DNA from: Octopus bimaculoides | Taxonomy: Eukaryota | Direction: 5' to 3' | DNA length: 46,199 nucleotides | Assembly (NCBI RefSeq): GCF_001194135.2 | Contig: NC_069004.1 | Location: 32,043,785 to 32,089,983, forward strand | Shown: positions 904-45,123 of the stretch, piece after piece | How the letters are laid out: each line of letters starts with the position of its first letter | How positions within the stretch are numbered: the stretch's first letter is position 1 | Notes under the pieces: generated by a model | What the model was told of the DNA's origin: nothing | What the model saw: the letters and a program-made list of their open reading frames with translations, nothing else | The model's database searches: none | Program-made: the position numbers and the translations under genes

Positions 904-1835
904 NNNNNNNNNNNNNNNNNNNNNNNNNNNNNNNNNNNNNNNNNNNNNNNNNNNNNNNNNNNNNNNNNNNNNNNNNNNNNNNNNNNNNNNNNNNNNNNNN
1001 NNNNNNNNNNNNNNNNNNNNNNNNNNNNNNNNNNNNNNNNNNNNNNNNNNNNNNNNNNNNNNNNNNNNNNNNNNNNNNNNNNNNNNNNNNNNNNNNNNNN
1101 NNNNNNNNNNNNNNNNNNNNNNNNNNNNNNNNNNNNNNNNNNNNNNNNNNNNNNNNNNNNNNNNNNNNNNNNNNNNNNNNNNNNNNNNNNNNNNNNNNNN
1201 NNNNNNNNNNNNNNNNNNNNNNNNNNNNNNNNNNNNNNNNNNNNNNNNNNNNNNNNNNNNNNNNNNNNNNNNNNNNNNNNNNNNNNNNNNNNNNNNNNNN
1301 NNNNNNNNNNNNNNNNNNNNNNNNNNNNNNNNNNNNNNNNNNNNNNNNNNNNNNNNNNNNNNNNNNNNNNNNNNNNNNNNNNNNNNNNNNNNNNNNNNNN
1401 NNNNNNNNNNNNNNNNNNNNNNNNNNNNNNNNNNNNNNNNNNNNNNNNNNNNNNNNNNNNNNNNNNNNNNNNNNNNNNNNNNNNNNNNNNNNNNNNNNNN
1501 NNNNNNNNNNNNNNNNNNNNNNNNNNNNNNNNNNNNNNNNNNNNNNNNNNNNNNNNNNNNNNNNNNNNNNNNNNNNNNNNNNNNNNNNNNNNNNNNNNNN
1601 NNNNNNNNNNNNNNNNNNNNNNNNNNNNNNNNNNNNNNNNNNNNNNNNNNNNNNNNNNNNNNNNNNNNNNNNNNNNNNNNNNNNNNNNNNNNNNNNNNNN
1701 NNNNNNNNNNNNNNNNNNNNNNNNNNNNNNNNNNNNNNNNNNNNNNNNNNNNNNNNNNNNNNNNNNNNNNNNNNNNNNNNNNNNNNNNNNNNNNNNNNNN
1801 NNNNNNNNNNNNNNNNNNNNNNNNNNNNNNNNNNN
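904..1835. other. Assembly gap (other gaps at 7557-8468, 16622-16831, 37588-37620, 44776-44785)
   Basis: Runs of N, mostly flanked by TA/CA microsatellites. Confidence 1.
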
Positions 1836-2173
1836 AACAAAAAAAAAAACAGAAAAAAAAAGATTTGCAATGATGCAACAATGTAAACAAAAAGCAGTTA
1901 TTGACTAAAATTTAGCACTGAAATAAGTCTAAAAATGACTAAATCATTGATTTTATTACTATTTATTATTATCATCATCATCGTTATTATTGCTATTATT
2001 ACTATTATTATTATTATTATTATTATTAAAATCACTATCATAGTCAGACTAATTATCAATCTAATCTTGTCTTCTATTATTTCCCTTAATAACTTAGGAA
2101 TTTCTCAATTTTCTCCTTTTTTTTTTCCAGCAAATCACCCATCAATATTTCAGAAGGTGTCTTCTGTATCACA

Positions 2174-2406
2174 GTTAATCTATGGCTAATGTTACAGTTG
2201 CTAGCTCTGAAACACTATCATATTATAGCTTATCTTAGGCTACATTATTGACACAATCACTGATAATCTGTGGCTATGTTATTGTTGCTAGCTCCGACAC
2301 ACAATTGCACCACTGTTAATCTCTGGCCACATTATAAATGCTAGCTTTGGTACACTATTATATCTGTGGCTACATTATAAATGCTAGCTCTGTGGCTATG
2401 TTATGG
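2174..2406. repeat. Diverged tandem repeat, about 6 units of 30-54 bp (ATCTGTGGCTAYRTTATAAATGCTAGCT)
   Basis: ATCT.TGGC and TGCTAGCT recur. Confidence 0.75.
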
Positions 2407-2940: not shown

Positions 2941-2997
2941 AGCTCCATAAAGCTCAGCTCCATAAAGCTCAGCTCCATAAAGCTCAGCTCCATAAAG
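2941..2997. repeat. Perfect 15-bp tandem repeat AGCTCCATAAAGCTC x3.8
   Basis: Read directly; the source of the FMELS repeats in ORF 2736-3056. Confidence 0.95.
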
Positions 2998-3415: not shown

Positions 3416-3803
3416 AGTGATGACGGTGGTAAGCAAGTGGTGATGGACAGTAAAAAGATGTGACGGTCAAGAAAGTTGTGATGACATTTAGTAAAGAAGT
3501 AATGACAGCTGGCAAAGGGGTGGTGATGGCGGGTAATGGTGGCTGGCAAAGGGGTGATGACGGCCAGTAAAGGGTTGACGCCGCCGATCAGTAAAGAGGT
3601 GACACTGGTCAGTGATGAAATGGTGATGGTTGTTAATGAAGTGATGACGGCCAGTAACTAGGTGATAAGGCGGTAAAGGAGTGATGACAATTTAAATACC
3701 AGAGTCTGAATGGCAATGACAGGCTTAAATGGTGATGACAAGTCTGTCAAGAGATGATGGACAATCTGTTAAGATGTGATGACAAGTCTGTTAAATGATG
3801 ACA
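3416..3803. repeat. Degenerate ~20-bp minisatellite (AAAGRRGTGATGACRGYCAGT-like)
   Basis: Roughly 18-20 recurrences of GTGATGA/GTGATGG/GTGAC separated by purine-rich linkers. Confidence 0.75.
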
Positions 3804-4382: not shown

Positions 4383-4542
4383 CTAAAAATGCAGATCCCC
4401 ATTCCTGAAGTAGTAAGGGTCACAGATATTGGACGTCGTTCTTGGCATCGAAGATCTCTGTCGGAGGAACTCACTGCCAGGGCTAACGAGTTCTTCTTGG
4501 ATGGAATCTTCATCGTCAGGCTCAAAGTCATCTTCGTAATTA
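4383..4542 (-). CDS. PPP2R3A: PPP2R3 terminal coding exon: (I)[52 protein letters not shown]
   Basis: Strong pyrimidine tract ctttcctttctgcag|T; phase 2 fits the preceding AT; acidic tail resembling the vertebrate FEDYETDEPASPSEF region; TAG at 4383-4385. Confidence 0.82.
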
Positions 4543-7518
4543 CTGCAGAAAGGAAAGAGAGAAAGAATGAAAAGATACGATCAGTCATTTGGCACCAAGA
4601 AATTATAATTTCAAGAAAAAGGAGTTGAGAGAAATAATGTAAAGGAGCCAGTGGCATGGTTATGAATAAAAGACAAATACAGGGATATTAAATACCATAC
4701 AACATAAATTCTGGATTAATGGTGCCATTCAAGAAAAGGAGGAGCTTATTGTTTGGAAATAGGAGGATAGATATAGACATATTTAGTGTGTATTTAATGC
4801 ACATGGCTCAGTGGTTAGAGTGTTGAGCTTACAACCATGAGGTAGTGAGTTTGATTCCTGAACTGGACTGTGTGTTGTGTTCTTAAGACTATTTCACGTT
4901 GCTCCAATTCACTCAGCTGTAGAAATGAGTTTGCAACGTCACTGGTGCTAAGCTGTACTGGCCCCTTTGCCCTTCCCTTGGGCCGACCAAAGCCTTGTGA
5001 GTGGATTTGGCAGACAGAAACTGAAAGAGACCCGTCGTATATATGTATATGTATGTCTGTGTGTGTGTGTTTGTGTGTCTGTATTTGTCAACGCAACATC
5101 GCTTGACAACTGATGCTGGTGTGTTTACGTCCCCGTAACTTAGCGGTTCGGCAAAACAGACCGATCGAATAAGTACTAGGCTTCCAAAGATTAAGTCCTG
5201 GGGTCGATTTGCTCGGCTAAAGGCAGTGCTCCAGCATGGCCACAGTCAAATGACTGAAACAAGTAAAAGAGTAAAAGAGTGGAATGTCAAGGGAGATTTA
5301 GCTGCTATTTCTAGCACGCTGAACCAACACCGTGGAGACGGCCTTCTCTTTCTCATTACATCAAATTTTAGATGGGTGACAAACGAGGTTATTTCATGTG
5401 AGCGCTGTTTGTATAACTATGCCATTACTCATCTATGTAGCATAAGTCTTCCACCATGTCCTTTAAAAGCACTTTAAATTTGAGGGAGACTTAGCTGCTA
5501 TTTCTAACAAGTTGACCAACAACATAGAGACAACCTTCCTTTTAATCTCTCTCATCATATCTCAGTTATTTTAGATGAATGACAATGAAATCTGAGAAAG
5601 ATTTAGCTGCTATTTCTAGCAAGTCGAACAACAATGCAGACGGGAGAAGCCCTCTCAACTCACCACAGTCGTTATTTAAAAGGGTGGATGACAAACAGGG
5701 CTATTCGCACCACAGCAATTTACGTTCCCACGTGGTTATTCAGCCATGCAGCCTTCCTTCTTTCTTTCTAAAACACTAGTGTGAGTCGAGGGAGATTTAG
5801 CTGCTATTTTTAGCAAATTGGACCCTCCCTCTTTTTGCTCCATTGCATCTCAGTTATTTTGGCGGGTCACTAAGGAGTTTATCTCGTGCTACTGTAATTT
5901 ATGTGCCTATATGGGCATTCAGGCATATAACCTCTCATTCCTTTTTGAAAACACTGCAGAGACATTTAAGGGACATTTAACTGCTATTTCTAACAATTTG
6001 ACCCTCTTCATCATCCATTAGTGCTCCATTATTTCAATGGGTGACAAAGTTATATGTCCCACAACTATTTTTTGTGAACCGATATAGATACTCAGCTACG
6101 TAGCTTGCCTTCGTTAGCTTTAAAAACACTGCAATAGGATTTGAGGAAGAATTAGCTGTTATTTCTAATAAGTTCAATAACAACACAGAGGGGAGAGGCT
6201 GTCTTTTTCATCACCATTCACTTATTTTGGTGGGTGACAAATGAGGTTATTTCACATCACTATTTCTGTGCCTACAGCCTTCCATTCTTTTAAAACACTA
6301 CAGTGAAGTGACGGACATTTAGCTGCTATTTCTAGCAAGTTGAACAACACAGCGAGGGAGAAAAGCCCTCTCTCCCTCCCTCATCACATTTCAGCTGTTT
6401 TGGCGGATGACAAAAGGGATTATTTCACACTTCTATCATATAGATACCTACAAACTTCCATTCTTTTAAAATACTACAACAATATGAGGGAGATTTGGCT
6501 GCTATTTCTACAGAGCTGAAAAGTGATTTGAGAGAGATTTAGCTGCTATTTCTAGAAAGTTGAACAGTGATGCGAGATTTAGCTGCTATATCTCAGGAGT
6601 GGCTATGTGGTAAGTAGCTTGCTTACGAACCACATGGTTCCCGGTTCAGTCCCACTGCGTAGCACCTTGGGGAAGTATCTTCTACTATAGCCTCGGGCCG
6701 ACCAAAGCCTTGTGAGTGGATTTGGTAGACGGAAACTGAAAGAAGCCCGTCGTATATATATATATATGTATGTGTGTGTATATGTTTGTGAGTCTGCGTT
6801 TGTCCTCCCAACATCGCTTGACAACCGATGCTGGTGTGTTTACGTCCCCGTAACTTAGCGGTTCAGCAAAAGCGACCGATAGAATAAGTACTAGGCTTAC
6901 AAAGAATAAGTCCTAGGGTCGATTTGATTTGACTAACGGCGGTGCTCCAGCATGTCCGCAGTCTAATGACTGAAACAAGTAAAAGAGTAAAGAGTAATAT
7001 GAGGGAGATTTAGCTGCTATTTCTACCGAGTTGAACAACAACAGATGGAAGAGGCTCTGCTCCCTAATCACCAGTTGAGCTATTCTGGTGGGTGACAAAC
7101 GAGGTTATTTCACACTTGAGCTATTTACGTTCCTTGGCTGTTAAGGCCAAACAGAGAGACACAACCCAACACACCCCTCCCTTCCATCCTACCTAACTAA
7201 ATTATACATGTTTGATATCACCTCCAAGGCTCCCCCGCTCTAATTATTCCCACACGTTATCGAATTATCGCTGTATCTTTATTGATTCTAAACTGGATTA
7301 TATTATCTTTGCAATGGGGTCTCTTTTTTCTTGTTTGTTTGTTTTTTGTTGGTTGGTTTTGTTTTCGTTTCGATATTCTTTGCTGGTTTATGCTAGTTGC
7401 TGACAGCAAATATTGCCCTAATAAATTATTATACTGGCAGAATAAATTGCATACACACAAACACACATTTTTAGGTATTAGGAACAGTAGGGAAACTCTG
7501 TGTGCATGTGTGTTGTGC

Positions 7519-7556
<38 letters not shown>

Positions 7557-8712
7557 NNNNNNNNNNNNNNNNNNNNNNNNNNNNNNNNNNNNNNNNNNNN
7601 NNNNNNNNNNNNNNNNNNNNNNNNNNNNNNNNNNNNNNNNNNNNNNNNNNNNNNNNNNNNNNNNNNNNNNNNNNNNNNNNNNNNNNNNNNNNNNNNNNNN
7701 NNNNNNNNNNNNNNNNNNNNNNNNNNNNNNNNNNNNNNNNNNNNNNNNNNNNNNNNNNNNNNNNNNNNNNNNNNNNNNNNNNNNNNNNNNNNNNNNNNNN
7801 NNNNNNNNNNNNNNNNNNNNNNNNNNNNNNNNNNNNNNNNNNNNNNNNNNNNNNNNNNNNNNNNNNNNNNNNNNNNNNNNNNNNNNNNNNNNNNNNNNNN
7901 NNNNNNNNNNNNNNNNNNNNNNNNNNNNNNNNNNNNNNNNNNNNNNNNNNNNNNNNNNNNNNNNNNNNNNNNNNNNNNNNNNNNNNNNNNNNNNNNNNNN
8001 NNNNNNNNNNNNNNNNNNNNNNNNNNNNNNNNNNNNNNNNNNNNNNNNNNNNNNNNNNNNNNNNNNNNNNNNNNNNNNNNNNNNNNNNNNNNNNNNNNNN
8101 NNNNNNNNNNNNNNNNNNNNNNNNNNNNNNNNNNNNNNNNNNNNNNNNNNNNNNNNNNNNNNNNNNNNNNNNNNNNNNNNNNNNNNNNNNNNNNNNNNNN
8201 NNNNNNNNNNNNNNNNNNNNNNNNNNNNNNNNNNNNNNNNNNNNNNNNNNNNNNNNNNNNNNNNNNNNNNNNNNNNNNNNNNNNNNNNNNNNNNNNNNNN
8301 NNNNNNNNNNNNNNNNNNNNNNNNNNNNNNNNNNNNNNNNNNNNNNNNNNNNNNNNNNNNNNNNNNNNNNNNNNNNNNNNNNNNNNNNNNNNNNNNNNNN
8401 NNNNNNNNNNNNNNNNNNNNNNNNNNNNNNNNNNNNNNNNNNNNNNNNNNNNNNNNNNNNNNNNNNNNCACACACACACACATATACACACAAACACATA
8501 AGAGGGTGCACGTGATATCTGAAATTGTAATTATTTCAAAATTATGAAAAGCAAAATCAAATTTATAGCTAAAACACACACACACACACACACACACACA
8601 GAAGTTACACCCCAACGCCACCCTCCCCTTCCAAAGCCTTCAGTAAATTACAAGTCCCAGTGAAGTGTGCTTATTACTGTGATTTATGGATTAGTGGTGG
8701 CGATGGTGATAG

Positions 8713-8745
<33 letters not shown>

Positions 8746-10360
8746 TGTGTGTGTGCATGAGCATGTATGTATGTATGTGTATATATTTAGATAGATATTA
8801 CTGGTGCTGTGGTGCTGCTCTTTACATACAACTGACTCTTTAATCATTGTTTTTCAATTGCTACCCTATATATATCTATCTGTCACTATCATTCTATATA
8901 CCTATCTATCTATCTAATTATTTATCTATCTATGTCTGTCATTATCATTCTGTCTATTTATCTATCTATCTATCCATCCACGTATCTATCTATCTCTATC
9001 CATCTATCTATCTATCTATCTATTTCTATCTATCTATCTCTCTATCCATCCATCCATCCATCTATCTATCTATGTATCTATCTATCCATCTATCTATCTA
9101 TGTCACTATCATTCTGTCTGTCTCTTTTTCTGTCGTCCTACCTATCCGTTTATCTACTTATCTATCTACCTCTATATTTATCCATCCATCTGTCCGGCCA
9201 ACCATCTGTGTGTGTGTGTCCTGGTCCCAGCCATCTATCTATGCCTATAGAGATATCCATCTACTCACCCATCACTCTATCTATATCTATCTGTCCTTCT
9301 CTGTATCTATTGGCAGAGCCATTACAGTAATAGACAAAATGACGCTGCAGTATCAGTTCCGGCTACCTACATTCCAGGTTCAAATCCTAGCAAAATCAAT
9401 AAAATTAAACACCAAGCACCCACATTATATATATATATATATATACTATCACCTCCCCTCTTAAAAGTCTTTGTCATGCAAGGTACTTGGTGACCCTGTC
9501 AGTGCAGAGGCCACTTAAAAGCACCCAGTCCACACTGTAAAGTGGTTGGTGTTCAGAAGGACATCCAGCTGTAAAAACCTTGCCAAAACTGACCTCACAT
9601 GTGCTTGTGCCATGTAAAAAGCACTAAGTCCACTTTGCTGGGTGGTTGGTGTTTGGAAGGGGCATCCAGCTGTAAAAATCCTGCGAAAACAGTCACAGAA
9701 GTCTAGTTCAGGCTTCTGCTGGGCCAGCTCTCGTGGCACCGTCCCACCCATGCTAGCTTAGAACACGGACCTTAAATGATGATATATATATATATATATA
9801 TATATTAGGAAGGGCATCCAGCTGTAGAAACTCTGCCAGATCAGAGGTAATAATAATAATGTTTAAGCAAATATTATTATGGAGCTAGGATAGATAGAAG
9901 AGACTGTCAGGATTAAAATTAGCTTATAATAAGTGAGTGTTAGGGATAAAAATTAGCTTAAGAGTGACCCCACTTTGCATATAAACACAGGGTAAATTTT
10001 CTGAGAAATTTTGTTGGGAAAAAATGTATCTTAATATGCAATCAATTATGGTAAGATGAAAGGTAGCCTAATATTTTCACACACACACACACACACGTAT
10101 ACAGAACGTGAGAAAGTGTAAAAGAATAACAGACTGGTGCCAAATATTGTACATTGTTTGAAAAGCTGAGATTTCATAACAGACACAGAATCACTGGAAA
10201 CCGATTTCTCACACAAGGACTTTTGACACTTCCATGTCAAAACATCACAAACTTGATATTTCGGTCACCCTGTTCCACCACCACCACATGCCCCTCTGCC
10301 CACTCTTTCTCATCCTGAAACTATTGCTGTCAGAGATGATGGTGTTGGTGGTAATAGTGA

Positions 10361-10392
<32 letters not shown>

Positions 10393-13300
10393 GTAAGAGC
10401 AGGAAATGTGGTGAGGGCGGAATGATGGTAGTGGTGTAAACGATGATGGCAGTGGTGGTCCTAGGGACGTGGTTGTAGTACTGGTGGTAGTTACAGTTCA
10501 ACTCTGCCGCAGGATTTGGCACCTTGCCATACCTCCAGATAGAGTCAGCAGAAGTGAGTGTCAGAGAATTTCTACAACTTCACCAGCCCCAACCTCTGGG
10601 CCCCTAATTCTTCTAATTGTAATCCCATGGATTACTCTGTGTGAGGTGCATTTGAGAAACACACACCCGACTGTTCGACCTGCAACACCAAGGCCAATCT
10701 AGTGGCCAAGACCAAAGAGGGGTTTGAAAATCTCCCCAGGCACAACAGTGATGAATGCATGTCCCAGGTTCCAGAACCATCCTGAAGCCACGGTGGAAGC
10801 CGAGGGCAACAACTTTGAGTAAATTGCTAACCCCCAACCATAATCTTCATGTCATTTACTCTTTAACTTGTTTCAGTCATTTGACTGGCCATGCTGGAGC
10901 ACCGCCTTTAGTCGAGAAAATCGCCCCCAGGATTTATTCTTTGTAAGCCTAGTACTTATTCTATCGGTCTCCTTTTGCCGAACTGCTAAGTTACAGGGAC
11001 GTAAACACACCACCATCGGTTGTCAAGCAATGCTGGGGAGGACAAACACATACATATATATATATATACATACGACGGGCTTCTTTCAGTTTCCGTCTAC
11101 CAAATCCACTATAGCCCGAGGCTATAGTAGAAGTCACTTGCCCAAGGTGCCACGCGGTGGGACTGAACCCGGAACCATGTGGTTGGTAAGCAAGCTACTT
11201 ACCACACAGCCTTTTTTATTTTAGGGCAGTGAGCTGGCAGAATTGTTAGCACACTGGTTGAAATGCTTAGCATTATTTCACCTGTCACTACGTTCTGAGT
11301 TCAAATTCCACCGAGGTTGACTTTGCCTTTCATTCTTTTGGGGGTCAATAAATTAAGTACCAGTGAAACACTGGGGTTGATATAATCGACTAGTCCCCTC
11401 CCCTCAAAAATTTCAGGCCTCGTACCCTAGTAGAAAGGGTGTTATTTGATTTCTGGCAGAATCGTTAACACATGGGGCAAAATGCTTAGCAGCATTTCAT
11501 TCAGGTTCTGAGTTCAAATTCTGCCAGGGGTCAACTTTGCCTTTCATCCTTTCGAGGTCATTAAATTAAGTACCAATTGAGTATTGGGGGTCGATGTAAT
11601 CAACTTAACCCCCTCACCCAAAATTTCAGGCCTTGTGCCGAGAGCAGAAAAGTGATGTATTTTGTCAGTCATGACTTGGTCATCTAGGTCAGTATTGCCC
11701 CCTTAGGGGTGGTAGAAAGATGGGGGTGGGGGGCTTGGAGAAAAGCTGAAGAAATCGACCCCAGGACTTATTCTTTGTAAGCCTAGTACTTATTCTATCA
11801 GTTCTTTTGCTAAACCACAAAGTTACAGGGACGTAAACACACTAACATCGGTTGTCAAGTGATGGAGGGGCGACAAACATAGACGCACAAACTTATACAC
11901 GATGGGCTTCTTTCAGTTTCCGTCTTCCAAATCGGCCCGAGGTTATAGAAGACACTTGCCCAAGGTGTCACGCAGTAGGACTGAACCCGGAACCATGTGG
12001 TTGGGAAGCTTCTTACCACACAGCCATGCCTGCGCCTACATACACACACACGTATATATATATATACATATATATATAGTGAAGTAGGGAAGGAAGCATG
12101 GCTTAGTGTTTAAGGTGTCACATTCACGATTGTGAGATTGTGGGTTCGATTCTCACACCTGGTGCTGCATGGTGTTTTTCAACAAAAACACTTCATTTCA
12201 CACTGCTCTGCGATCATTCCATCATCTGCCTTGTGACACGTCGTGCACCTGTACAGGTAAAGTCGATCTGATGGAGGGAGGTAGTGAGCTTATGTGCAAC
12301 ACAAACATTTGATTACTATAAACAAATCATCTGTGTGGTTGTTCGGCAAGAAATTGCCAAACCCTCATACGTCGTCTAACTATGGGCTTCTTTCAGTTTC
12401 CGTCTATCAAATCCACTAATAAGGCTCTAGTGGCCCCGGGACTATAGTAATCCCTTAGCAAAACACTTTCGATATCCCCTCTCTTCCAGCACAAAAGTTT
12501 TAATCATCCCAAAATATTTCAAATTAATATTTGCCTAACAACCCAGGGACACAACTTCCGTTTAAATATGCTGGAGTTAATTCCCCTTACAAAATAAAGC
12601 TCTTCGCAATTAACTGACGTACAAAGTGTTTGTTCTTTTTTGATGTTGTGCCAACTGAAGAATTAACCCAGAAGTTGAATTTAATTCAACAGTCCACTGG
12701 TACCAGCAACATTTTGGAACTTGGAAAAATGGGTTCCCCATAATTTGCCGGAGAAGAACTGAGCAGATTGATTGATCATCTTTTCCTAGACGTTTTATAG
12801 GTACGTTATGAAAGATAAGGATTAGTGAAGGTTAAACTCGTTAAACCACAACCCGAAGATGACCTCCACCAAAGAAAAGTATTAGTGTCTGGTGACGATT
12901 GTGTGGATATGATCGATTTTTCCATTTGATTTACGTCTGTTTTTTTATGCTAGCATGAGTTAGAGGTACACATTTTTGAGGAAGTGTTTTACAGTGATAT
13001 TCCTGGGCTTACCTGCTTTCCAGGAAAGGTTTAGCAACAGGAGTGGTATCCAAGATTCCTTATTTCACATGTTTTTGAAGGAACAAAGAAATTCTGGGAA
13101 AGGGTTACATCTGCTGGAACAGGATTTCACCACCACATCCTCATAACAATAATCAGTGAAATGCTGAAATATTTGATACTCACATGTCTTCATTAACACC
13201 GACTTCAGCCAGGAGGTTCTCGTATTCTTCAGCAGCATATTTCTCCCAGTCTGACATTTCGGGTCCATCTGTCTCTGGGTCCTGCAACAAATGGGGACAG

Positions 13301-15598: not shown

Positions 15599-16987
15599 GA
15601 TAACCTGCCGCTTACCAAAGAGAGACGTCTAGTGTGTCCAGTGTTCAAAGAAAAAGGTCTTACCTAGTTGGATGTTTCTTGTCTTCTTCAGCAATGAGAA
15701 ACCAGACAAATTCAGGGTAACTCATTTTCCCCTCCTTCTGGGCCTCTCCTCTGCAAAACAGTAAACAAACAAAACATTATCATCATCATCATCATCATCA
15801 TTATTATTATTATTATTATTATTATCAAGGCATAAAGCTGGCAGAATCGTTAGCACACTGGGCAAAATGCTTAGCAGTATTTCGTCTGCCGCTATGTTCT
15901 AAGTTCAAATTCTGCCTAGGTTGACTTTGCCTTTCATCCTTTCAGGATCAATTAAATAAGTACCAGTTACACACTGAACAGGATCATGGGAGCAGCCCTC
16001 TCACTCACTCCTGACTGAACCATTAAAAGAAAATTAGGATGATGATGATGATGATGATGATGATTCTGGTACTTACCTCGTTACAGCACCCGAGAATATT
16101 CGATCCACTATTCTAGAAGACATGGCTGGAAAAGCAAGAGAAACAGGTGTAATTAACCATTTCTTGAGAAGGCTACCTATATACCTGTCTATCAATAGAG
16201 AGATAAAAGGATACAGAGAGATGGGGAGACAGATGGATGGATGGGGAGATGGATGGATGGATGGACAGCCAGACAGATGAATAGAAAAATAGACAGAAAA
16301 ATAAAGATAAAAAAACAGACAGACAGATGGATGGATGGATGGTTAGATGGACAGATAGATAGATGGCTGGGTGGAAGATATAAGGGCAGATGTAGAGGTA
16401 TAGTTGAGAAGTTTGCTTGCAATCACAGCTTTAGGTTCAGTCCCACTACACGGCATATGGGGCAAGTATCTCCCACTAAGACTGAAAGATCCCTGTCACA
16501 GTATGTGGGGGGGGAGTGCAGGAGGGGGTGGCATATAGCTAAATGCTTGTACATATCCGTTTATCTTCAGAATACATTTAGTTTTTGTATCCATATATAT
16601 ATATATCCTTATATATATATANNNNNNNNNNNNNNNNNNNNNNNNNNNNNNNNNNNNNNNNNNNNNNNNNNNNNNNNNNNNNNNNNNNNNNNNNNNNNNN
16701 NNNNNNNNNNNNNNNNNNNNNNNNNNNNNNNNNNNNNNNNNNNNNNNNNNNNNNNNNNNNNNNNNNNNNNNNNNNNNNNNNNNNNNNNNNNNNNNNNNNN
16801 NNNNNNNNNNNNNNNNNNNNNNNNNNNNNNNCCACTGATACAACAACACCTACTACCACTACCACCACCACCACCATGCCACATACTATCACAATCACAT
16901 CTCTTACTACAACTACTACCTACACACACACACACACACAAGCACCACCTTTTTACAAACTGCTAACACCACCACCACCACCACCAG

Positions 16988-17024
<37 letters not shown>

Positions 17025-18485
17025 GTGACACATACAAGGCTGAAAAGGTGAGAGACAATGTGAGAAGAGAGACAAGGTGGACTGTGACGTACCGTGGTCG
17101 TTGTGGCGCGCCAGGTCCGATCTGTCAATGTAGAGGTCGTGGTCTTGATCCAGTTCCCAGAATTTACAATATATCACATAGAAATGTTCGTAGGAAAAAT
17201 AGTCTGTTATTTGATTGATGTCGTCTTCTTCTTCCAGCAATAAGAGAGTCTGGTGGGGGGAGGACAACATCATCATCATTATTATCATCATCATCAGGAG
17301 AAGGAATAACAGAAACAACAACAACACTAACACCAAGAACAACAGTGACTCCAACAACAGCCGCAACAACAACAGCAGCAGCAACAACAACAACAACAAC
17401 AATTTGTCTGACTAAAATCCTTCAGGGCACTGCTCCAGTATGGCCACAGTCCAATGACTGCAACAAGTAAACGAATAAGAAAGTCACTACTTTGGCAAGA
17501 CTTACCTGTAAAAAATGGCTTCGCCTCAGTTCATTTGGTGTGATTTTCCCTGACCAAGATCTGTTTACACAGAAGAATATTCTGGAGATGACCTGAATGG
17601 GCAAGAAGAAGAAATAATAATAATAATGATAATAATAATAGTAATAATGATAATAAAAATAGTAATAATGATAATAAAAATAATAAGTGTTCCTGTTATT
17701 GTAGGTGCTCTAGGTATGATAAAAAAGGGGATTTCAGAAACATCGAGAAAAGATCCCAGGAGAACCATGTCTCACAGAAATCTAAAAGATTGTGCTGAGT
17801 AATGCCCACATCCTTAGAAAAAGCCTAACCATTTAGATGCCTGTGTTGTATTGCATGAAGGCATTTCACTACTGCCCCTGCCATTTCCCCAGCTTTCAGT
17901 CATACTGTAACATCTCTTATCCTTCACTTGCCCCAAGATGCTGGTTGTGTCTCAGCAGGTAGTATTATTCATTCTTTCAATCACTGGATATAAAATGTGG
18001 CCCACGAAACCAAGACCCCCCCCACACACATTCAGGTGATTTTCCTGCATCACCATCTTACCCTTATACACCAGTCTGTTACAAGGTTACCTGCTTACAG
18101 CTAAGTAGACTGGAACAACGTGAAATGAAGTATTTTGCTCAAGAACACAATATGCCACTTGTGCTGGGAATTGAAACCATGGTCCTGCAATCATGAATGC
18201 AACACCCTGACCACTAGGCCACCTGAACTCATGATCAAGAGATTATGGTTAAAATTGTAGCATGTGTATATCTTGTCATATCTTTTACTTGCTTCAGTCA
18301 TTAGACTGTGGCCATGCTGGAGCACCACCTCCAAGAACTTTTAGCTGAATGAATTGACCCCAATACTTTATATCTTTAAGCCTAATTCTTATTCGAGCTC
18401 TGTTGCCAAACTGCTAATTTGTGGGGATGTAAACACACCAACACTGGTTGTCAGGTGGTGACAGGGGACAAGCACAGACACAAAG

Positions 18486-18518
<33 letters not shown>

Positions 18519-18855
18519 CACAAAAGGCTTCTTTCAGGTTCCGTCTACCAAATCCACTCACGAGTCCTTGGTCAGCCCTCCCAAGGATATAGTAGAAGAC
18601 ATTTGCCCAAGGTGCCATGCAGTGGAACTGAACCTGGAACCATGTGGTTGGAAAGCAAGCTACTTACTACCCAGCCAAAAATTATTTATTAGAAGGTGTC
18701 AACTGATGTTTATAAGAGAGATGACTGATGATAAGGGAAAATAAATGATGAGTATTAACCCTTTCCATATCAACCCACCCAAGGCCACCACCACTGATTC
18801 TACAATACAAACATTGTTTTAATGTTATCTAAAAAGTTCTCATGTTTTTGGGTAG

Positions 18856-30948: not shown

Positions 30949-32064
30949 CACACACACACATACACACACTTGTTTTCCAAACAACATATGAACACTGTTA
31001 CAAACTGGTTCAATCTGGCAACATCTAGAGTAAATATGTTAAACTCTCTGAAGGTAAAAACATCACCACGAATACCACCATCACACCACCACCACCACCA
31101 CCACCACCACCACCACCACCACAACAACAACAACAAGTCTAAACAGTTGAAATAGCAACTGAAAAAAATCCAAACTTGTCAAAAATAAAGACTCGCAGCA
31201 AACTGAATTAATAAAAATAGTTTTTTGGATTGTGTCCATCACATACACACAGATATCATTGTGTGTATACAAATCTGTGTGTGTGTGTATATATATATAT
31301 AATAAAGAGAGACAAGCATGGGCATGGCTTTGGTGTAAAGAAGTTCATTTTCCAACAAAATGGTTTTTGGTTTCAGTCCTATTATTTGTTGCTGTGGCCA
31401 AATGTCTCCTGTAATAGCTCAAGGCCAACCAAAGTCTTGTGGGTGGATTTGGTAGATGGTAACTGAAAGAAGCCAGCCATATAAATATGAGTGTGTGTGT
31501 GTGTGTGTTTATGCGATATATATCTAAGTGTGCTGGAATGTTATATTTATTTATTTATATGTATCAAACCAGAAGACTGGAAAAATTTGGTATGTTTTAG
31601 TTCCACGTCACCTGTGTTTCATTACAGGATCGGAGTGAGAATATCCAATCCGTAGTTCTTCAGACGAAGATTCAGAATTAATATTTATGGATAAGAGATT
31701 CTATACATTTTTTCCTACTTGTCTACCTTTGTAACTCCTATCCTGTATTGAAACACAAGTAACAAGGAATTAAAAATAGACAAAATTCTCCAGTTTTCTC
31801 TTCTGATATGTAATTACTCTACAAAAAAGAATTCACATAAAATTTAAATAGCTATGTATATTTTATTCAAAATAATAACCTCTATATACGCAGAAGTGCC
31901 TCTATAGATAGGCGCAGGGGTGGCTGTAGCTTGCTTACTAACCACATGGTTTTGGGTTCAGTCCCACTGCATGGCACCTTGGGCAAGTGTCTTCTACTAT
32001 AGCCTCGGGCCAACCAAAGCCTTGTGAGTGGATTTGGTAGACGGAAACTGAAAGAAGCCCATCG

Positions 32065-32099
<35 letters not shown>

Positions 32100-33555
32100 C
32101 TGTGTTTGTCGCCCCCAACATCGCTTGACAACCGATGCTGGTGTGTTTACGTCCCCGTAACGTAGTGGTTCGGCAAAAGAGACCGATAGAATAAGTACTA
32201 GACTTACAAAGAATAAGTCTTGGGGTCGATTTGCTCGACTAAAGGCGGTGCTCCAGCATGGCCGCAGTCAAATGGCTGAAACAAGTAAAAGGGTAAAAGA
32301 GAGAGAGAATATACATAGATTTGATTAATGTGAAAATGCAGATGTGCCTCACAAGGACAAAGCTTGGATAATAACCGACAGAAACTATGCAGGTCCCTCA
32401 GGGGACATTCAGATACACCAAGTGAGGATAAAAACCAAGTCTAGTAAAATTATCTCTAACTTGAGCATCACCGACATTTGTTATTGCTAGCTGGCACTGA
32501 GAGCCGATCTAAGATTTAATTCAGTAACCGCCAGGACTATCCGCTGCTCTGGCGGTGATCCCGCTTGGATGGTGCTGATAGCGCTCCACTGGCACGGGTG
32601 CCACTCATTAAATTTGGTTCAGTTTCGATCTCACTTGCTTCAACAGGTCTTCGCAAGCTGAGTTTAGTGTCCAATGAAGGAAGGTTGGCATGGGTGCCAG
32701 TCATCGAATTTGGTTCAATTTTGATCATAATAGTATAATAATAGTGCCGGTGGCATGTAAAAACCACCCACTACACTCTCGGAGTGGTTGGCGTTAGGAA
32801 GGGCATCCAGCTGTAGAAACACTGCCAGATCAGATTGGAGCCTGGTGCAGCCTCCTGGCTTCCCAGACCCCGGTCAAACCATCCAACCCATGCTAGCATG
32901 GAAAGCGGACGTTAAATGATGAGGATGATTACTATTATTATTATTATCATCACTATTATTATAATTATTATTATTATAATTATTATTATTATAATTATAA
33001 TTACTATTATAATTATTATTACTATCATAATTATTATTATTACTACTATAATTATTACTATTATTATAATTATTATTAGTATTACTATTGTAATTATTAT
33101 TACTATTATAATTATAATTATTACTGTTATAATTATTATTATTACTATTACTATTATAATTATTATTATAATTATTACTATTATTATTATTAGTTATTAC
33201 TATTGTTATTATTATTAGTTTCTTATTAATGTCAGTTTTGTTTTTATAATATTTTTCATTTTTTTTTTTTGGCTTTTTGTTGTGTTTTTTTTACCAAAAT
33301 TAAATTTAGCTGAAGAAGATAAAGTAGATGTGTGTGTATGCGTGTGTATGCGTGCGTGTGTGTGTGTGTTTGGCAGAAAGCCAGGAATGGAACCGACAAA
33401 CAGGTATCACAAATAGAAAAGTTCAAGCTAGAACACCAGAAGTAGAACTTCATGAAATGGTAATCAAAGACTTTCAACGCTAAAAACCAGTCCAAACATC
33501 GTTCCATTTTCTTGTTTATTTTTTGTTTTGTTTTTTATTTATTCCTAGATTTTTT

Positions 33556-34077: not shown

Positions 34078-34684
34078 CAAATAATAAATGAGTATATGCA
34101 TATATACGTACAAGTATGTGCATACCTGCATCTACCTGTATATATAGGTGCATATCTGGGTACAGGACATTGCAAACAAAACGTAGACAAAAAATAATAA
34201 TAAGCAGAGTACAGAAAACACACAGGCCACATAGAGAACATTTTCCTTCATCAGCTGCCCCCATTCTAACACAGGCGTTTCGAAGAGTTATATATATATA
34301 TATATGCATAAGTATGTATATGTGTGTGTGTATATATGTATATACACACACACATATAAGTAAGCATATCAATGCAAAACAAGGTGAAAAGAAAGAGTAC
34401 TGAAATAGCAAAGACGGAGTAATATGCTGTTTATTGGAGCCAAAAAATATCTCCACAAACTCTTACTCAGAGTTTCTCATTACTGTTTGTCGGAGAGTTC
34501 CTAGGCATGGCTGTGTGGTAAGGAGGTTGCTTCCCAACCGCATGGTTCTAAGTTCAGTCCCACTGCGTGGCACCTTGGGCACGTGTGTTCTGTTATAACC
34601 TCGGGTCAACCAAAGCCTTGTGAGTGGATCTGGTAGATGGAAACTAAAGGAAGCCCATCATACATACACACATATATATATATA

Positions 34685-34732
<48 letters not shown>

Positions 34733-35370: not shown

Positions 35371-35583
35371 CTGCAAAAAGAAAAAAAAACACATGAATAG
35401 ATGGAGATAAATAAGCAAATATATTTATTGATAATTTAATATACACCGTTACAAAAGAGCCACCAACGGTTTTATGCAATGGTACGCATTAAAACTAATA
35501 ATGGCTTCTTTGTAATTGTGTATGTTAAATGATATTTATCTATCACCAGATGTTTTTTGGTTGAATGTACCTATGATGGAGCC

Positions 35584-37381: not shown

Positions 37382-37644
37382 ATTCTTTTACTTGTTTCAG
37401 TCATTTGACTGTGGCCATGTTGGAGCACCGCATTTAGTCGAGCAAACCGCCCCCAGGACTTATTCTTTGTAAGCCTAGTACTTATTCTATCGGTCTCTTT
37501 TGCCGAACCACTAAGTGACGGGAACGTAAACACACCAGCACCAGTTGTCAAGCGATGTGGGGGGAGGGGGCACAAACATATACACACNNNNNNNNNNNNN
37601 NNNNNNNNNNNNNNNNNNNNATATATATACACCCGTTGTGTGTC

Positions 37645-43209: not shown

Positions 43210-44346
43210 CACATACACGTGTATACAGGGTGTGAGGAGATGGTATATAGAAAGTTTATATTTATTTCATGTTTACTAATCCCTGCAAAGCAGGTATTGG
43301 TGGTGGTGGGTAGACAGGAGGGGATGTGGACCAGTGTGGTGGTGGTGGTGGTGGTGGTAGTGATGGTGACGATGATGGCAGTGGTGGTGGTGGTGGTGGT
43401 GGTGGTGGCTATACTGATTGTGTAACACTGTAGTAATGGTTAAAGTTGCAGCTGATGGATGGTAAGGATCTTTTGATGGATGTTTACAGTAGACAGCAGT
43501 GGTGGTAGTCATGGTGGAGGTAGGTATAAATGATGTGATGGTGGCGGCAGTGATGCTGGGAGTTATAAATGGTGGTGGTGGCGGTTACAAAAGGCGTGGT
43601 GTTAGTGGTTGATGGTTGAGGTGGTAGTGGTTAATGTTGATGGAGGTAGTTATAGATGGTCTACAATTCATCTACATACAGTAATCCCGCCATATCGTGG
43701 TTTATTTATTTAAGCTTACCTCAATTCCTCCATGGTGTTGTTTTGCATTTATAATAAAATAAATATATATAAATTATAAAAAAAAAAAAAAGATATGGGT
43801 TCAGTCCCACTGTGTGGTACCTTGGGCAAGTGTCTTCCACTATACTTCTCTCTATTTTTATAGAATAAATAACGACCATGAACTAATTATTTTCGTTGTT
43901 TCTCTGTCATTCTTTCTCTGTGGTGGTGGTGGTGGTGGTTTCAGCAGTATTGGTCATCTACAGCTACCCAATGTGTTCTTCACTGATTTTTAAGACAAAA
44001 AGAAGGAAGATTTGGCTGCTATTTCCAGTAGATTTCAAGACCACACAGAAGCTCCCTTACTGACAACACAAAGTCAATGGTAGTGGTGGTGGCAATAGTG
44101 GTAGTGGTGGTGGTGGTGGTGGTGGTGGTGGTGGTGGTGGTGATGGTTGTAGTGATAACAACAGTGGTATTTCCAGCTAATTTCTGGGTTAATTCTTTCA
44201 GTTTGTACTGCTTAACTCCTCTCAGATTCTATAAACAGTTTTTTTCAACAATTACTAACTTCCTACTCACATTCCCTGTATATATATATATATTTTATAT
44301 GTGTGTGTATATATATATATACATATATATACACATATATATATAT

Positions 44347-44737
44347 AGGCACAGGCATGGTTGTGTGGAAAGAAACTGGCTTCCCAACCACATGGTTCCA
44401 GGTTCAGTACCACTGCGTGGCACCTTGGACGAGTGTCTTCTACTATAGCCTCAGGCCGACCAAAGCCTTGTCAGTGGATTCGGTGGAAGGAAACTGAAAG
44501 AATCCCATCATGTGTGTGTGTGTGTGTGTGTGTGTCTTCGTATTTGTATGTGTGTGCGTCCCCATTACTGTTTGACAATTGGTGTTGGTGTGTTTATGTC
44601 CCAGTAACCTAGTAGTCCAGCAAAAGAGACTGATAGAATAAGTACTAGGCTTACAAAGAATAAATCCTGAGATCGATTTGCTTGATTAAAACTCTTTAAA
44701 CAGTGCTCCAGCATGGCCACAATCAAATGACTGAAAC
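44347..44737 (+). mobile_element. Family A SINE, full length
   Basis: Same head, CORE-like segment and tail as the other copies. Confidence 0.85.
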
Positions 44738-44775: not shown

Positions 44776-45123
44776 NNNNNNNNNNTTTTTTTTTTTTGTA
44801 ACTCAACAACACAAAAAAGATCAATCTGCTCACAATATTGAGTCACTCTGTCCATAAATATTTTGATTTTATTCTTAAACTAGCTTTGATAAGAATAGTT
44901 TTTTAATTTGATATCTGCAATAACTTTATACATAAGTATTTAATAGATCAAGTGAGAAAACTTAGTCGTAACAGTGAATCACAAAATACACACGTGCACA
45001 GACTCACACACACACACAAAGTGGTGCTTACAATATCCTAAGTACCACCACCACCACCACTACCACCAGTACCATAACACTTGTGACCACAACTAACAAT
45101 CAAACATCACCACACCTATAATA

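What the first reader, a model, noticed from the sequence alone, without database searches (positions are those of the whole stretch)
5290..7130. Intronic ~175-bp-period array with an invariant dyad-symmetric core and diverged linkers
Seen: 11 copies of GAGGGAGATTTAGCTGCTATTTCTAGCA at spacings of 192, 112, 194, 180, 175, 167, 176, 44 and 42 bp, then one more after a SINE insertion. The core AGA-TT-TAGC-T-GCTA-TT-TCT is a quasi-palindrome (14 of 19 positions symmetric). Two weaker blocks (TTATTTTGGYGGGTGACAAA, CATTCTTTTAAAACACT) recur, while the linkers are very diverged. The three shortest units keep little more than the core. A solo core-like copy lies at about 44005-44030. The array begins ~750 nt upstream of the terminal-exon acceptor. 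Established analogy: satellites such as alpha satellite combine a nucleosome-length unit with a short conserved protein-binding box. Inference: uneven conservation suggests selection on the core as a dimeric-protein or recombinase/transposase site, a nucleosome-phasing array, or a cluster of processed intronic RNAs. It looks CRISPR-like superficially, but the linkers are mutually homologous.
Basis: partly seen in the sequence, partly recalled or inferred. Interest (0 to 1): 0.7.

Follow-up and report, generated by a model that had tools for sequence, protein, structure and literature searches.

The report
Old intronic tandem repeat with conserved box
A decayed array of ~175-base repeats in the last intron of a phosphatase-subunit gene keeps one 18-20-base box nearly unchanged in every repeat; this resembles the transposon-borne mini-satellites of other molluscs and is probably a protein-recognition site rather than anything new in kind.

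Summary
The 20-mer AGATTTAGCTGCTATTTCTA (2 mismatches or fewer) occurs 11 times between 5294 and 7025 on the + strand and once more at 44008; none is expected by chance. Spacings are 193, 112, 194, 180, 175, 167, 176, 44 and 40 bp, then one copy beyond a 397-bp SINE. The box differs from its consensus at 4.5% of positions and the rest of the unit at 27%; no column shuffle out of 20,000 matched this.

The dyad symmetry is weak: about 3% by chance, and no hairpin forms. There is no Rfam hit, no tRNA and no conserved RNA fold.

The array lies antisense in the last intron of a PP2A B'' subunit gene. All partial units keep the box end and lose the far end. A half-unit 37 kb away shows the family is dispersed.

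My best reading (confidence 0.4) is a transposon-derived, satellite-like short array whose box is a protein-recognition and rearrangement site, as in bivalve pearl/DTC84/HINE elements. The flank features that define those elements were not found. I could not separate conservation within the repeat family from selection by the host or from local gene conversion, because no cephalopod genome was reachable. It is a new member of a known kind, of modest interest.

The parts
5283..5473 (+). Monomer 1 (full, 191 bp); box at 5294-5313, 0 changes
   Evidence: nhmmer unit profile E = 2e-42; 20-mer match
5477..5585 (+). Monomer 2 (109 bp; far end lost after block B); box at 5487-5506, 1 change
5587..5778 (+). 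Monomer 3 (full); box at 5599-5618, 0 changes
5781..5955 (+). Monomer 4 (full); box at 5793-5812, 1 change
5961..6130 (+). Monomer 5 (full); box at 5973-5992, 2 changes
6138..6300 (+). Monomer 6 (full); box at 6148-6167, 2 changes
6303..6476 (+). Monomer 7 (full); box at 6315-6334, 1 change
6481..6520 (+). Short monomer 8 (unit positions 4-43 only); box at 6491-6510, 1 change
6523..6566 (+). Short monomer 9 (unit positions 2-45 only); box at 6535-6554, 0 changes
6574..6594 (+). Box copy 10, cut by the SINE; its last 5 bases may belong to the SINE's 5' end. Possibly the 5' copy of a target-site duplication with monomer 11
6600..6996 (+). SINE 2 inserted in the array; tRNA-derived family with 10 or more copies in the window; 7.5% from the in-window consensus
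6994..7143 (+). Monomer 11 (unit positions 2-154; far end lost; right end of the array); box at 7006-7025, 0 changes
4780..5285 (+). SINE 1 (different head, same 3' body as SINE 2). It abuts the left end of the array, and its tail ends 8 bp before the first 20-mer
44003..44088 (+). Dispersed half-monomer (unit positions 9-101) in unique flanks, running into a (GGT)n microsatellite; box at 44008-44027, 2 changes
4386..4541 (-). Coding part of the terminal exon of the PP2A B'' regulatory-subunit gene; acceptor is 745 nt from monomer 1
   Evidence: tblastn with P0002, 81% identity over 52 aa ending in the same ...GDLHF
13183..13281 (-). Penultimate exon. The last intron therefore spans about 4542-13182 and contains the array, which lies antisense to the gene
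   Evidence: tblastn with P0002, 85% identity over 33 aa; upstream exons mapped

Best explanation
This is a short, old, satellite-like tandem array belonging to a dispersed and probably transposon-borne repeat family. It has seven long monomers of 163-192 bp, one 109-bp monomer and two or three cut down to about 44 bp. It sits antisense in the last intron of a PP2A B'' subunit gene and was later hit by two SINEs.

Each monomer begins, about 18 bp in, with the box ATTTAGCTGCTATTTCTA. I propose that this box is the recognition site of a sequence-specific DNA-binding or DNA-cutting protein: a transposase, a Rep-like or recombinase-type enzyme of the parent element, or a host factor it recruits. 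On this view the box is kept by selection on the repeat family. It also serves as the point where monomers are added, truncated and lost, which would explain why every partial monomer keeps the box end.

Shown here: the array, the very uneven conservation, the truncations that always spare the box end, a dispersed half-copy, and the absence of RNA signals.

Inferred: protein binding, transposon origin, and conservation at the level of the family rather than the host.
For: - Box against remainder: 4.5% versus 27% non-consensus, with 0 of 20,000 column shuffles as extreme. CpG decay does not explain it, because the linkers are already CpG-depleted and transitions to transversions are about 1.1.
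- The conservation is of the primary sequence, not of a hairpin. The 3' arm of the only foldable stem varies in 6 of the 10 array copies where it can be read, and in the solo copy.
- All partial monomers start at unit position 2-4 and lack their far ends (109 bp, 40 and 44 bp, 150 bp). The left edge of the array also lies at the unit start. Two independent deletions of about 85 and 131 bp that both miss the 28-bp box have a joint chance of about 0.03 (my calculation).
- A half-monomer sits in unrelated flanks 37 kb away. This implies dispersal; one extra copy in 46 kb suggests a family of thousands of copies in a genome of gigabase size (inference).
- The box's divergence (JC 0.046) is about that of the SINEs inserted into the array (JC 0.08). 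This fits an array that arrived with identical boxes and already diverged linkers.
- Published mollusc precedents exist. DTC84/pearl has ~160-bp core repeats with a conserved palindrome in a low-variability segment near each junction, proposed as a hotspot for array length change (PMC3879986). Cg_HINE has 140-180-bp monomers in arrays of 2-29, found also within genes, with boxed segments of reduced variability (PMC7492417). Conserved motifs are obligatory parts of monomer junctions in nematode satellites (PMC3694981).
Against: - No transposon flanks were found. There is no subterminal inverted-repeat pair between the flanks above chance (2 low-complexity hits against 0.8 expected). There is no palindrome with a stem of 6 bp or more in 4546-4790 or 7130-7520. 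No microsatellite adjoins either array end. The right flank is cut by an assembly gap at 7557 and the left flank is interrupted by SINE 1.
- Linker divergence (23-42%) is higher than within Cg_HINE clusters (8.5-21%).
- Only one outside copy is visible, and no copy could be found in any reachable collection.
- No autonomous partner element is in the window.
- The box has changed somewhat less than the younger SINEs (P 0.03-0.10), which leans towards constraint or homogenisation at this locus.
Confidence: 0.4

Rival explanations
1. Host-level cis element. The ten or eleven boxes form a cluster of identical binding sites for a host DNA-binding protein, such as a multi-finger C2H2 protein or another transcription or chromatin factor. 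The cluster would act as an intronic enhancer, silencer, insulator or nucleosome-positioning array for the PP2A B'' gene or a neighbour, and would be kept by purifying selection at this locus.
For: The box changed at 3.7-4.5%, while the younger SINEs that interrupt the array changed at 7.5-8.0% (P 0.03-0.10). All deletions spared the boxes. An 18-20-bp conserved stretch fits a long recognition site. The ~175-bp period is about one nucleosome plus linker. GCTATTTCTAGC is one base away from a MEF2-type CTA(A/T)4TAG site and one copy is a perfect match (the motif is recalled from memory, so this is a lead only).
Against: SINE divergence from a crude in-window consensus is an upper bound, so the rate contrast is not secure. 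A half-copy elsewhere in unique flanks argues for a mobile family. No cross-species, chromatin or expression data could be reached. Two SINE insertions, one of them in or next to a box, were tolerated.
Confidence: 0.2
2. No selection: local concerted evolution. Short-tract gene conversion or unequal exchange keeps re-copying the box among neighbouring units. Only the box retains enough identity to recombine, so an island of identity maintains itself while the linkers drift. Alternatively, the box is a local mutational cold spot.
For: Identity falls off gradually on both sides of the central 18 bp; GAGGGAG and AGCAAGTTGAAC are intermediate. Rearrangement junctions cluster next to the box. Two box variants are shared by units whose linkers are not close: G2>C in units 5 and 7, and A7>G in unit 8 and the solo copy.
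Against: Conversion tracts limited to about 20-28 bp for tens of millions of years are unusual (general knowledge). Blocks B and C are also conserved above background without being contiguous with the box. The solo copy 37 kb away keeps the box too (2 of 20 changes against about 24% in its linker). No hairpin or strong palindrome exists that would make the box a break hotspot.
Confidence: 0.15
3. Tandem array of a miniature inverted-repeat element. The quasi-palindrome would be the junction of the right and left terminal inverted repeats of a ~175-bp MITE arrayed head to tail, and the termini would be conserved because transposition needs them.
For: The box sits at the monomer junction and shows 7 of 9 symmetric pairs. 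MITE-derived satellites are documented in the literature cited in PMC3879986 and PMC7492417.
Against: The symmetry is only 9 bp per arm with 2 mismatches, stops abruptly, and occurs about 3% of the time by chance. The centre is a single T, so no recognisable target-site duplication is present. The solo copy begins upstream of the box rather than at the dyad centre.
Confidence: 0.1
4. Cluster of small processed RNA genes (snoRNA, miRNA, or piRNA-like units with a conserved promoter or processing box) hosted in the intron or transcribed antisense to it.
For: The layout is repetitive and intronic, with a conserved box followed by a variable body. The + strand has T-runs at unit ends.
Against: There is no Rfam match at E <= 1 in 4500-7556 apart from microsatellite artefacts, and no tRNA-like gene. 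Consensus folds are -7.1 and -3.0 kcal/mol over 212 columns with almost no covariation. Nothing in the unit is complementary to the box, and there are no C/D or H/ACA boxes. The bodies are homologous to one another but decayed by indels.
Confidence: 0.05

Closest known systems
pearl / DTC84 tandem-repeat-containing MITE-like elements of bivalves (PMC3879986)
   Same: Core repeats of ~160 bp in short head-to-tail arrays. [quoted passage not shown] Truncated repeats occur at array ends. Copies lie in euchromatin, including near genes.
   Different: DTC84 has defined L and R flanking modules with inverted repeats, an adjoining (ACGG)n microsatellite and an AA target duplication; none of these was found here. 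Its palindrome TTGTCCGGACAA is perfect and lies at the 3' end of the repeat. Here the box lies near the 5' end, is barely palindromic, and the linkers are far more diverged. The host here is presumably a cephalopod, not a bivalve. No sequence similarity could be tested.
Cg_HINE, Helentron-associated non-autonomous elements carrying satellite-like repeats in Crassostrea gigas (PMC7492417)
   Same: Monomers of 140-180 bp in arrays of 2-29, dispersed through the genome and present in non-coding parts of genes. Some monomer groups share only two motifs of reduced variability.
   Different: Cg_HINE is defined by a 5' subterminal inverted repeat, its complementary inverted repeat and a microsatellite in the left flank, and by a 3' subterminal inverted repeat plus palindrome in a 60-bp right flank. 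I tested for these and did not find them. Within-cluster monomer diversity is 8.5-21%, against 23-42% here.
Tandem repeats of Meloidogyne holocentromeres that share a 19-bp box (PMC8097292), and conserved junction motifs in Meloidogyne satellites (PMC3694981)
   Same: A ~19-bp box is almost fully conserved within monomers that are otherwise only 32-51% identical. Arrays are short and embedded in unrelated sequence. The conserved motifs sit at monomer junctions and are proposed to drive rearrangement by a transposition-like or illegitimate-recombination mechanism.
   Different: The nematode box is GC-rich (~80%) with a stable dyad (-5.4 kcal/mol) and is associated with CenH3. Here the box is AT-rich, its dyad has no folding energy, and the array is a single 1.9-kb locus inside an intron.
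Alpha satellite with the CENP-B box
   Same: A nucleosome-sized unit with a 17-bp protein-binding box that is conserved above the rest of the unit.
   Different: Alpha satellite forms megabase-scale, homogenised, centromeric arrays. This one is short, heavily diverged and intronic.

Membership tests
pearl/DTC84/HINE (Helentron-associated elements with central tandem repeats) | Central head-to-tail array of a few to about 30 monomers of 140-180 bp | tested here: met
   There are 10-11 monomers, all on the + strand. Full units are 163-192 bp.
pearl/DTC84/HINE (Helentron-associated elements with central tandem repeats) | Segment of reduced variability, often palindromic, next to the monomer junction | tested here: met
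   The box is 4.5% non-consensus against 27% for the rest, and lies about 18 bp from the unit start. The palindromic character is weak.
pearl/DTC84/HINE (Helentron-associated elements with central tandem repeats) | Short microsatellite directly adjoining one end of the array | tested here: not met
   The left end is SINE 1 followed by unique intron sequence. The right end runs into unique sequence, and the nearest simple repeat, (TTGT)n at 7324-7365, is about 180 bp away. The solo half-unit does run into (GGT)n, but such repeats are common in this window.
pearl/DTC84/HINE (Helentron-associated elements with central tandem repeats) | Left and right flanking modules with 11-12-bp subterminal inverted repeats and a 3' palindrome | tested here: not met
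   Inverted matches between 4546-4790 and 7130-7556 were 2 low-complexity hits against 0.8 expected. No stem of 6 bp or more was found apart from (TA)n. Caveats: old age, the SINE interruption on the left, and the assembly gap at 7557.
pearl/DTC84/HINE (Helentron-associated elements with central tandem repeats) | Many dispersed copies sharing flanks; AA (T^T) insertion site; empty paralogous sites | not testable with these tools
   No cephalopod genome is reachable. Only one extra half-copy is in the window. Exact ORF look-ups and a protein-profile search found nothing related.
Classical satellite DNA with a protein-binding box (alpha satellite / CENP-B box type) | Long homogenised arrays in heterochromatin or centromeres | tested here: not met
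   The locus spans 1.9 kb (about 1.46 kb of repeat once the SINE is excluded), inside an 8.6-kb intron of a conserved gene. Monomers are 58-77% identical.
Classical satellite DNA with a protein-binding box (alpha satellite / CENP-B box type) | Short box conserved above the rest of the monomer | tested here: met
Classical satellite DNA with a protein-binding box (alpha satellite / CENP-B box type) | Demonstrated protein binding to the box | not testable with these tools
   This needs a pull-down, EMSA or ChIP experiment.
Intronic small-RNA gene cluster (snoRNA / miRNA) | Match to a known RNA family, or a conserved secondary structure with covariation | tested here: not met
   Rfam gave no hit in the array. 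ARAGORN found none. RNAalifold gave -7.1 and -3.0 kcal/mol with about zero covariation.
CRISPR array | Identical repeats separated by unrelated spacers, in a prokaryotic setting with cas genes | tested here: not met
   The 'spacers' are homologous to one another. The setting is a spliced animal gene with SINEs.

The most novel reading that the evidence does not exclude
The box is the binding site of a lineage-specific host protein, for example a member of the greatly expanded cephalopod C2H2 zinc-finger set or a domesticated transposase. On this reading it has been held by purifying selection at ten or eleven sites in this intron for tens of millions of years. A transposon-derived array would then have been co-opted as a regulatory, insulator or chromatin-phasing module for the PP2A B'' gene.
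Probability: 0.12. Interest if true: 0.6.

Novelty: new member of a known kind. Interest (0 to 1): 0.3.

Why it matters
If the main reading is right, cephalopods join bivalves, insects and nematodes as lineages where short satellite-like arrays travel with mobile elements and carry a conserved junction box. The 18-mer is then a ready probe for finding the whole family, its flanks and the protein that recognises it. Repeats are reported to make up about two thirds of the Octopus vulgaris genome, much of it unclassified (PMC13282606).

If the host-level reading is right, this is a candidate co-opted regulatory cluster in a conserved signalling gene.

Either way the claim rests on one locus. The pattern itself, a conserved box in diverged monomers, is already well described elsewhere.

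Tried and rejected
- I scanned metagenome contigs for the exact 20-mer. The 4 hits are all single chance matches inside AT-rich bacterial coding sequence (peptide ...DLAAIS...) with no flanking similarity.
- I looked up ten window ORFs exactly in the 15-billion-protein collection. None is present, so the source genome is not in that collection.
- I searched 1.84 billion representative proteins with a profile of the open-frame unit translations ([14 protein letters not shown]...). It gave 2 hits, both translations of unrelated satellites: an 88-bp repeat in L005, and L006. Their scores are inflated by 21 and 4 weak stretches, and their DNA contains no box. This search would miss relatives that share only the box, because such matches score about 30 bits.
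- The collection showed no octopod genomic ORFs; the best exon hit was 93% identical, and only one cDNA-like relative, P0002, turned up.
- Cross-species intron comparison failed. L007 (P0078) is a compact non-cephalopod orthologue without the SINE, the unit or the terminal exon. L008 (P0002) is spliced cDNA.
- Full-text searches for the box and for SINE strings found no paper, and the supplement of the O. vulgaris repeat paper has no match.
- Rfam, ARAGORN and RNAalifold on both strands were negative.
The neighbouring TGCTA-TTTC-TAGCA stem gives -2.8 to -3.3 kcal/mol with z of -0.8 to -1.65, which is not significant.
- The test for HINE/pearl flanks was negative.
- A [SINE + unit] block duplication is rejected. 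The SINE parts are 88% identical but the adjoining units only 73%.
- A link between block B and the GTGATGAC repeat at 3417-3802 is not supported without allowing gaps.
Full report
**1. What is there**

The 20-mer AGATTTAGCTGCTATTTCTA, allowing 2 mismatches, occurs at 5294, 5487, 5599, 5793, 5973, 6148, 6315, 6491, 6535, 6575 and 7006, and once more at 44008. All copies are on the + strand, and dinucleotide-preserving shuffles give none.

Start-to-start spacings are 193, 112, 194, 180, 175, 167, 176, 44 and 40 bp. The next spacing, 431 bp, crosses an insert at 6600-6996 that has ten or more other copies in the window and is therefore a SINE. Tandem Repeats Finder sees only the three short units (period 44), because the long units are too diverged.

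A profile built from the seven long units finds exactly these eleven copies plus 44003-44088 (unit positions 9-101, E = 1.6e-5). It finds nothing else in 46 kb.

**2. How uneven the conservation is**

- In the multiple alignment the 20-mer shows 10 changes in 220 positions (4.5%). The other columns average 27% non-consensus.
- No 20-column window in 20,000 column shuffles is as conserved. The binomial probability at the background rate is about 5e-18.
- Pairwise, linkers are 58% identical in the multiple alignment and 62-77% in local BLAST alignments.
- The contrast is just as sharp in the 44-bp units, where the flanks next to the box are only about 55% alike (by inspection).
- CpG decay is not the cause. 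The linkers are already CpG-poor (0-6 CpG per unit against 5-9 expected), and transitions to transversions are about 1.1.
- A second block, TTTTGGYGGGTGACAAA, recurs in six units.
A short AAARYACT version ends six long units.

**3. The dyad**

Seven of nine pairs of AGATTTAGC-T-GCTATTTCT are symmetric. That is true of 0.3% of the window's 19-mers, or about 3% after allowing for the possible placements within the box.

As single-stranded DNA the 19-mer does not fold at all (0 kcal/mol). The only stem nearby, TGCTA-TTTC-TAGCA, gives -2.8 to -3.3 kcal/mol with z of -0.8 to -1.65. Its 3' arm lies outside the best-conserved 18 bp and varies in 6 of the 10 array copies where it can be read, and also in the solo copy.

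What is conserved is therefore a primary sequence, ATTTAGCTGCTATTTCTA, not a hairpin or a convincing dimer site.

**4. Setting**

- The window carries a spliced gene on the minus strand for a PP2A regulatory subunit B''. Hits reach 93% identity and carry Pfam PF17958 and PF13499. Exons map at 35385, 26035, 25856, 17592, 17249, 16129, 15752, 15486 and 14143.
- A cDNA-like ORF from a relative (P0002; Logan run SRR23936171) fixes the last three exons at about 14044-14000, 13281-13183 and 4541-4386.
- The array therefore lies in the last intron, about 4542-13182. Its nearest end is 745 nt from the terminal acceptor, and the box as written is antisense to the gene.
- I could not verify with tools that the organism is a cephalopod.
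- An assembly gap at 7557-8468 lies 410 bp beyond the right end of the array.

**5. Anatomy of the units**

Every partial unit keeps the box end and lacks the far end:

| Unit | Unit positions kept |
|---|---|
| 2 | 4-109 |
| 8 | 4-43 |
| 9 | 2-45 |
| 11 | 2-154 |

The left edge of the array is also at unit position 3 or lower. The natural monomer therefore starts about 18 bp upstream of the 20-mer, and rearrangement junctions recur at that point. Two independent deletions of about 85 and 131 bp that both miss the 28-bp box have a joint chance of roughly 0.03 (my arithmetic).

Copy 10 is cut by SINE 2. Its last five bases fit the SINE's 5' end about as well as they fit the box. The sequences ATGC-GAGATTTAGCTGCTAT before the SINE and ATGAGGGAGATTTAGCTGCTAT after it could be a target-site duplication of about 20 bp. 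There are thus ten or eleven independent boxes.

SINE 1 ends 8 bp before the first 20-mer. The two SINE-plus-unit blocks are not duplicates of each other, since the SINE parts are 88% identical and the adjoining units 73%.

**6. An internal clock**

Against an in-window consensus, SINE 2 differs at 7.5% and SINE 1 at 8.0%. The box differs at 4.5%, or at 3.7% if the five ambiguous bases of copy 10 are dropped. The one-sided Fisher P is 0.03-0.10.

A published octopus calibration gives JC 0.09 as about 25 My and JC 0.2 as about 56 My (PMC13282606). On that scale the SINEs are about 22 My old. The linkers, if they diverged in place, would be older than 50 My per lineage.

Two histories fit these numbers:
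- (i) The units duplicated here long ago and the box has been held ever since.
- (ii) The array arrived at about the time of the SINE burst as a copy of a master element whose units were already diverged but whose boxes were kept. Everything has since decayed roughly neutrally.

The data lean slightly towards some constraint or homogenisation at this locus but cannot decide between the two.

**7. What it is not**

- No Rfam family matches inside the array at E <= 1. The only hits are mir-297/466-type artefacts on a (TA)n run at 7502-7556.
- ARAGORN finds no tRNA-like gene.
- Consensus folding of seven units gives -7.1 kcal/mol on the + strand and -3.0 kcal/mol on the - strand over 212 columns, with negligible covariation.
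- Reading frames through the box are open in one frame per strand but shift between units, so the sequence is not coding.

**8. Search for relatives**

- The exact 20-mer in metagenome contigs gives four chance matches in bacterial genes.
- Ten window ORFs are absent from the protein collection.
- A profile of the unit translations against 1.84 billion representative proteins returns only two unrelated satellite translations whose DNA lacks the box.
- The best genomic orthologue reachable, L007, is a compact non-cephalopod gene without the SINE, the unit or the terminal exon.
- No paper in the library contains the box or the SINE strings.

The decisive genome-wide and cross-species tests could therefore not be run.

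**9. Comparison with what is known**

The pattern has good precedents:
- Bivalve DTC84/pearl elements have ~160-bp core repeats. Each ends with a conserved palindrome in a segment of reduced variability, proposed as the hotspot for changes in array length (PMC3879986).
- Oyster Cg_HINE elements have 140-180-bp monomers in arrays of 2-29, occurring also inside genes (PMC7492417).
- Meloidogyne tandem repeats share only a 19-bp dyad box in monomers that are otherwise 32-51% identical (PMC8097292).
- Conserved motifs are obligatory parts of monomer junctions and are proposed to drive cut-and-paste or illegitimate recombination (PMC3694981).

I tested the flank features that define HINE/pearl membership and did not find them. 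There is no subterminal inverted-repeat pair above chance, no flank palindrome and no adjoining microsatellite. Age, the SINE on the left and the gap on the right weaken this negative result. I therefore say the array works like those systems, not that it is a member of them.

**10. Verdict**

| Reading | Confidence |
|---|---|
| Transposon-derived, satellite-like short array whose box near the monomer junction is a protein-recognition and rearrangement site, conserved at the level of the repeat family | 0.4 |
| Host cis-regulatory or chromatin cluster | 0.2 |
| Local conversion without selection | 0.15 |
| MITE terminal-repeat junction | 0.1 |
| Small-RNA cluster | 0.05 |

It is a new member of a known kind, with interest 0.3.

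Noticed in passing
window 3417-3802 (+): Eleven copies of GTGATGAC (1 mismatch or fewer) at about 20-60-bp spacing. Tandem Repeats Finder reports a 22-bp unit, GGTGATGACAAGTCTGTTAAGA, at 3731-3803. The cluster lies 600-1000 nt downstream of the gene's stop codon in the gene's sense, so it may be in the 3' UTR. It loosely resembles block B of the array (GGTGGATGACAAA), but not without allowing a gap.
   Followed up: partly
window 4780-5285 and 6600-6996, plus about 11 further copies or fragments (e.g. 10855-11211, 18281-18677, 31907-32297, 34508-34851, 44358-44737): A tRNA-derived SINE family with an internal (TA/TG)n stretch and a GAGTAAAA-type tail is very abundant, with 13 or more copies or fragments in 46 kb. 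Divergence from the in-window consensus falls into roughly two age classes, about 5-8% and 14-20%. SINE 1 has a different head joined to the same 3' body. Both SINEs at the array end within 8-10 bp upstream of a box, which may reflect a target preference or a target-site duplication that includes the box.
   Followed up: partly
window 43918-43937 and 44080-44145: The solo half-unit is bracketed by (GGT)n microsatellites. The downstream one starts exactly where block B (GGTGGGTGAC) would be, as if the microsatellite grew out of that block.
   Followed up: no
window 2165-2404 (+): This is another small, degenerate tandem repeat: 4-5 copies of ATCTGTGGCTAYRTTAT...GCTAGCTC at spacings of 26-53 bp, lying downstream of the gene.
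   Followed up: partly
window 2941-2997 (+): A perfect 15-bp tandem repeat, AGCTCCATAAAGCTC, occurs 3.8 times.
   Followed up: no
window 7502-7556: Rfam gives sub-threshold mir-297, mir-466 and mir-3149 matches on both strands of a (TG)n(TA)n run that ends at the assembly gap. These are microsatellite artefacts (42 bits or less, against gathering scores of 85-100).
   Followed up: yes
window 904-1835, 7557-8468, 16622-16831, 37588-37620, 44776-44785: These are assembly gaps (runs of N), several directly after (TA)n or (TG)n runs. The gap at 7557 hides whatever lies beyond 410 bp to the right of the array.
   Followed up: no
L008 1-1690 (Logan SRR23936171 contig): A relative's PP2A B'' cDNA-like contig is split into two ORFs (1-1374 and 1388-1690) by a frame change inside the ...FFDTFFNL... 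exon. This may be an assembly indel or a real variant. Its C-terminal 52 residues are 81% identical to the window's terminal exon.
   Followed up: no
L005 3001-8649: An 88-bp satellite in an unrelated ENA contig had been called as a 1882-residue 'protein', because its unit length is not a multiple of three and it is read in all three frames. It matched the unit profile only through 21 summed weak stretches. This shows how repeat translations inflate HMMER E-values.
   Followed up: yes
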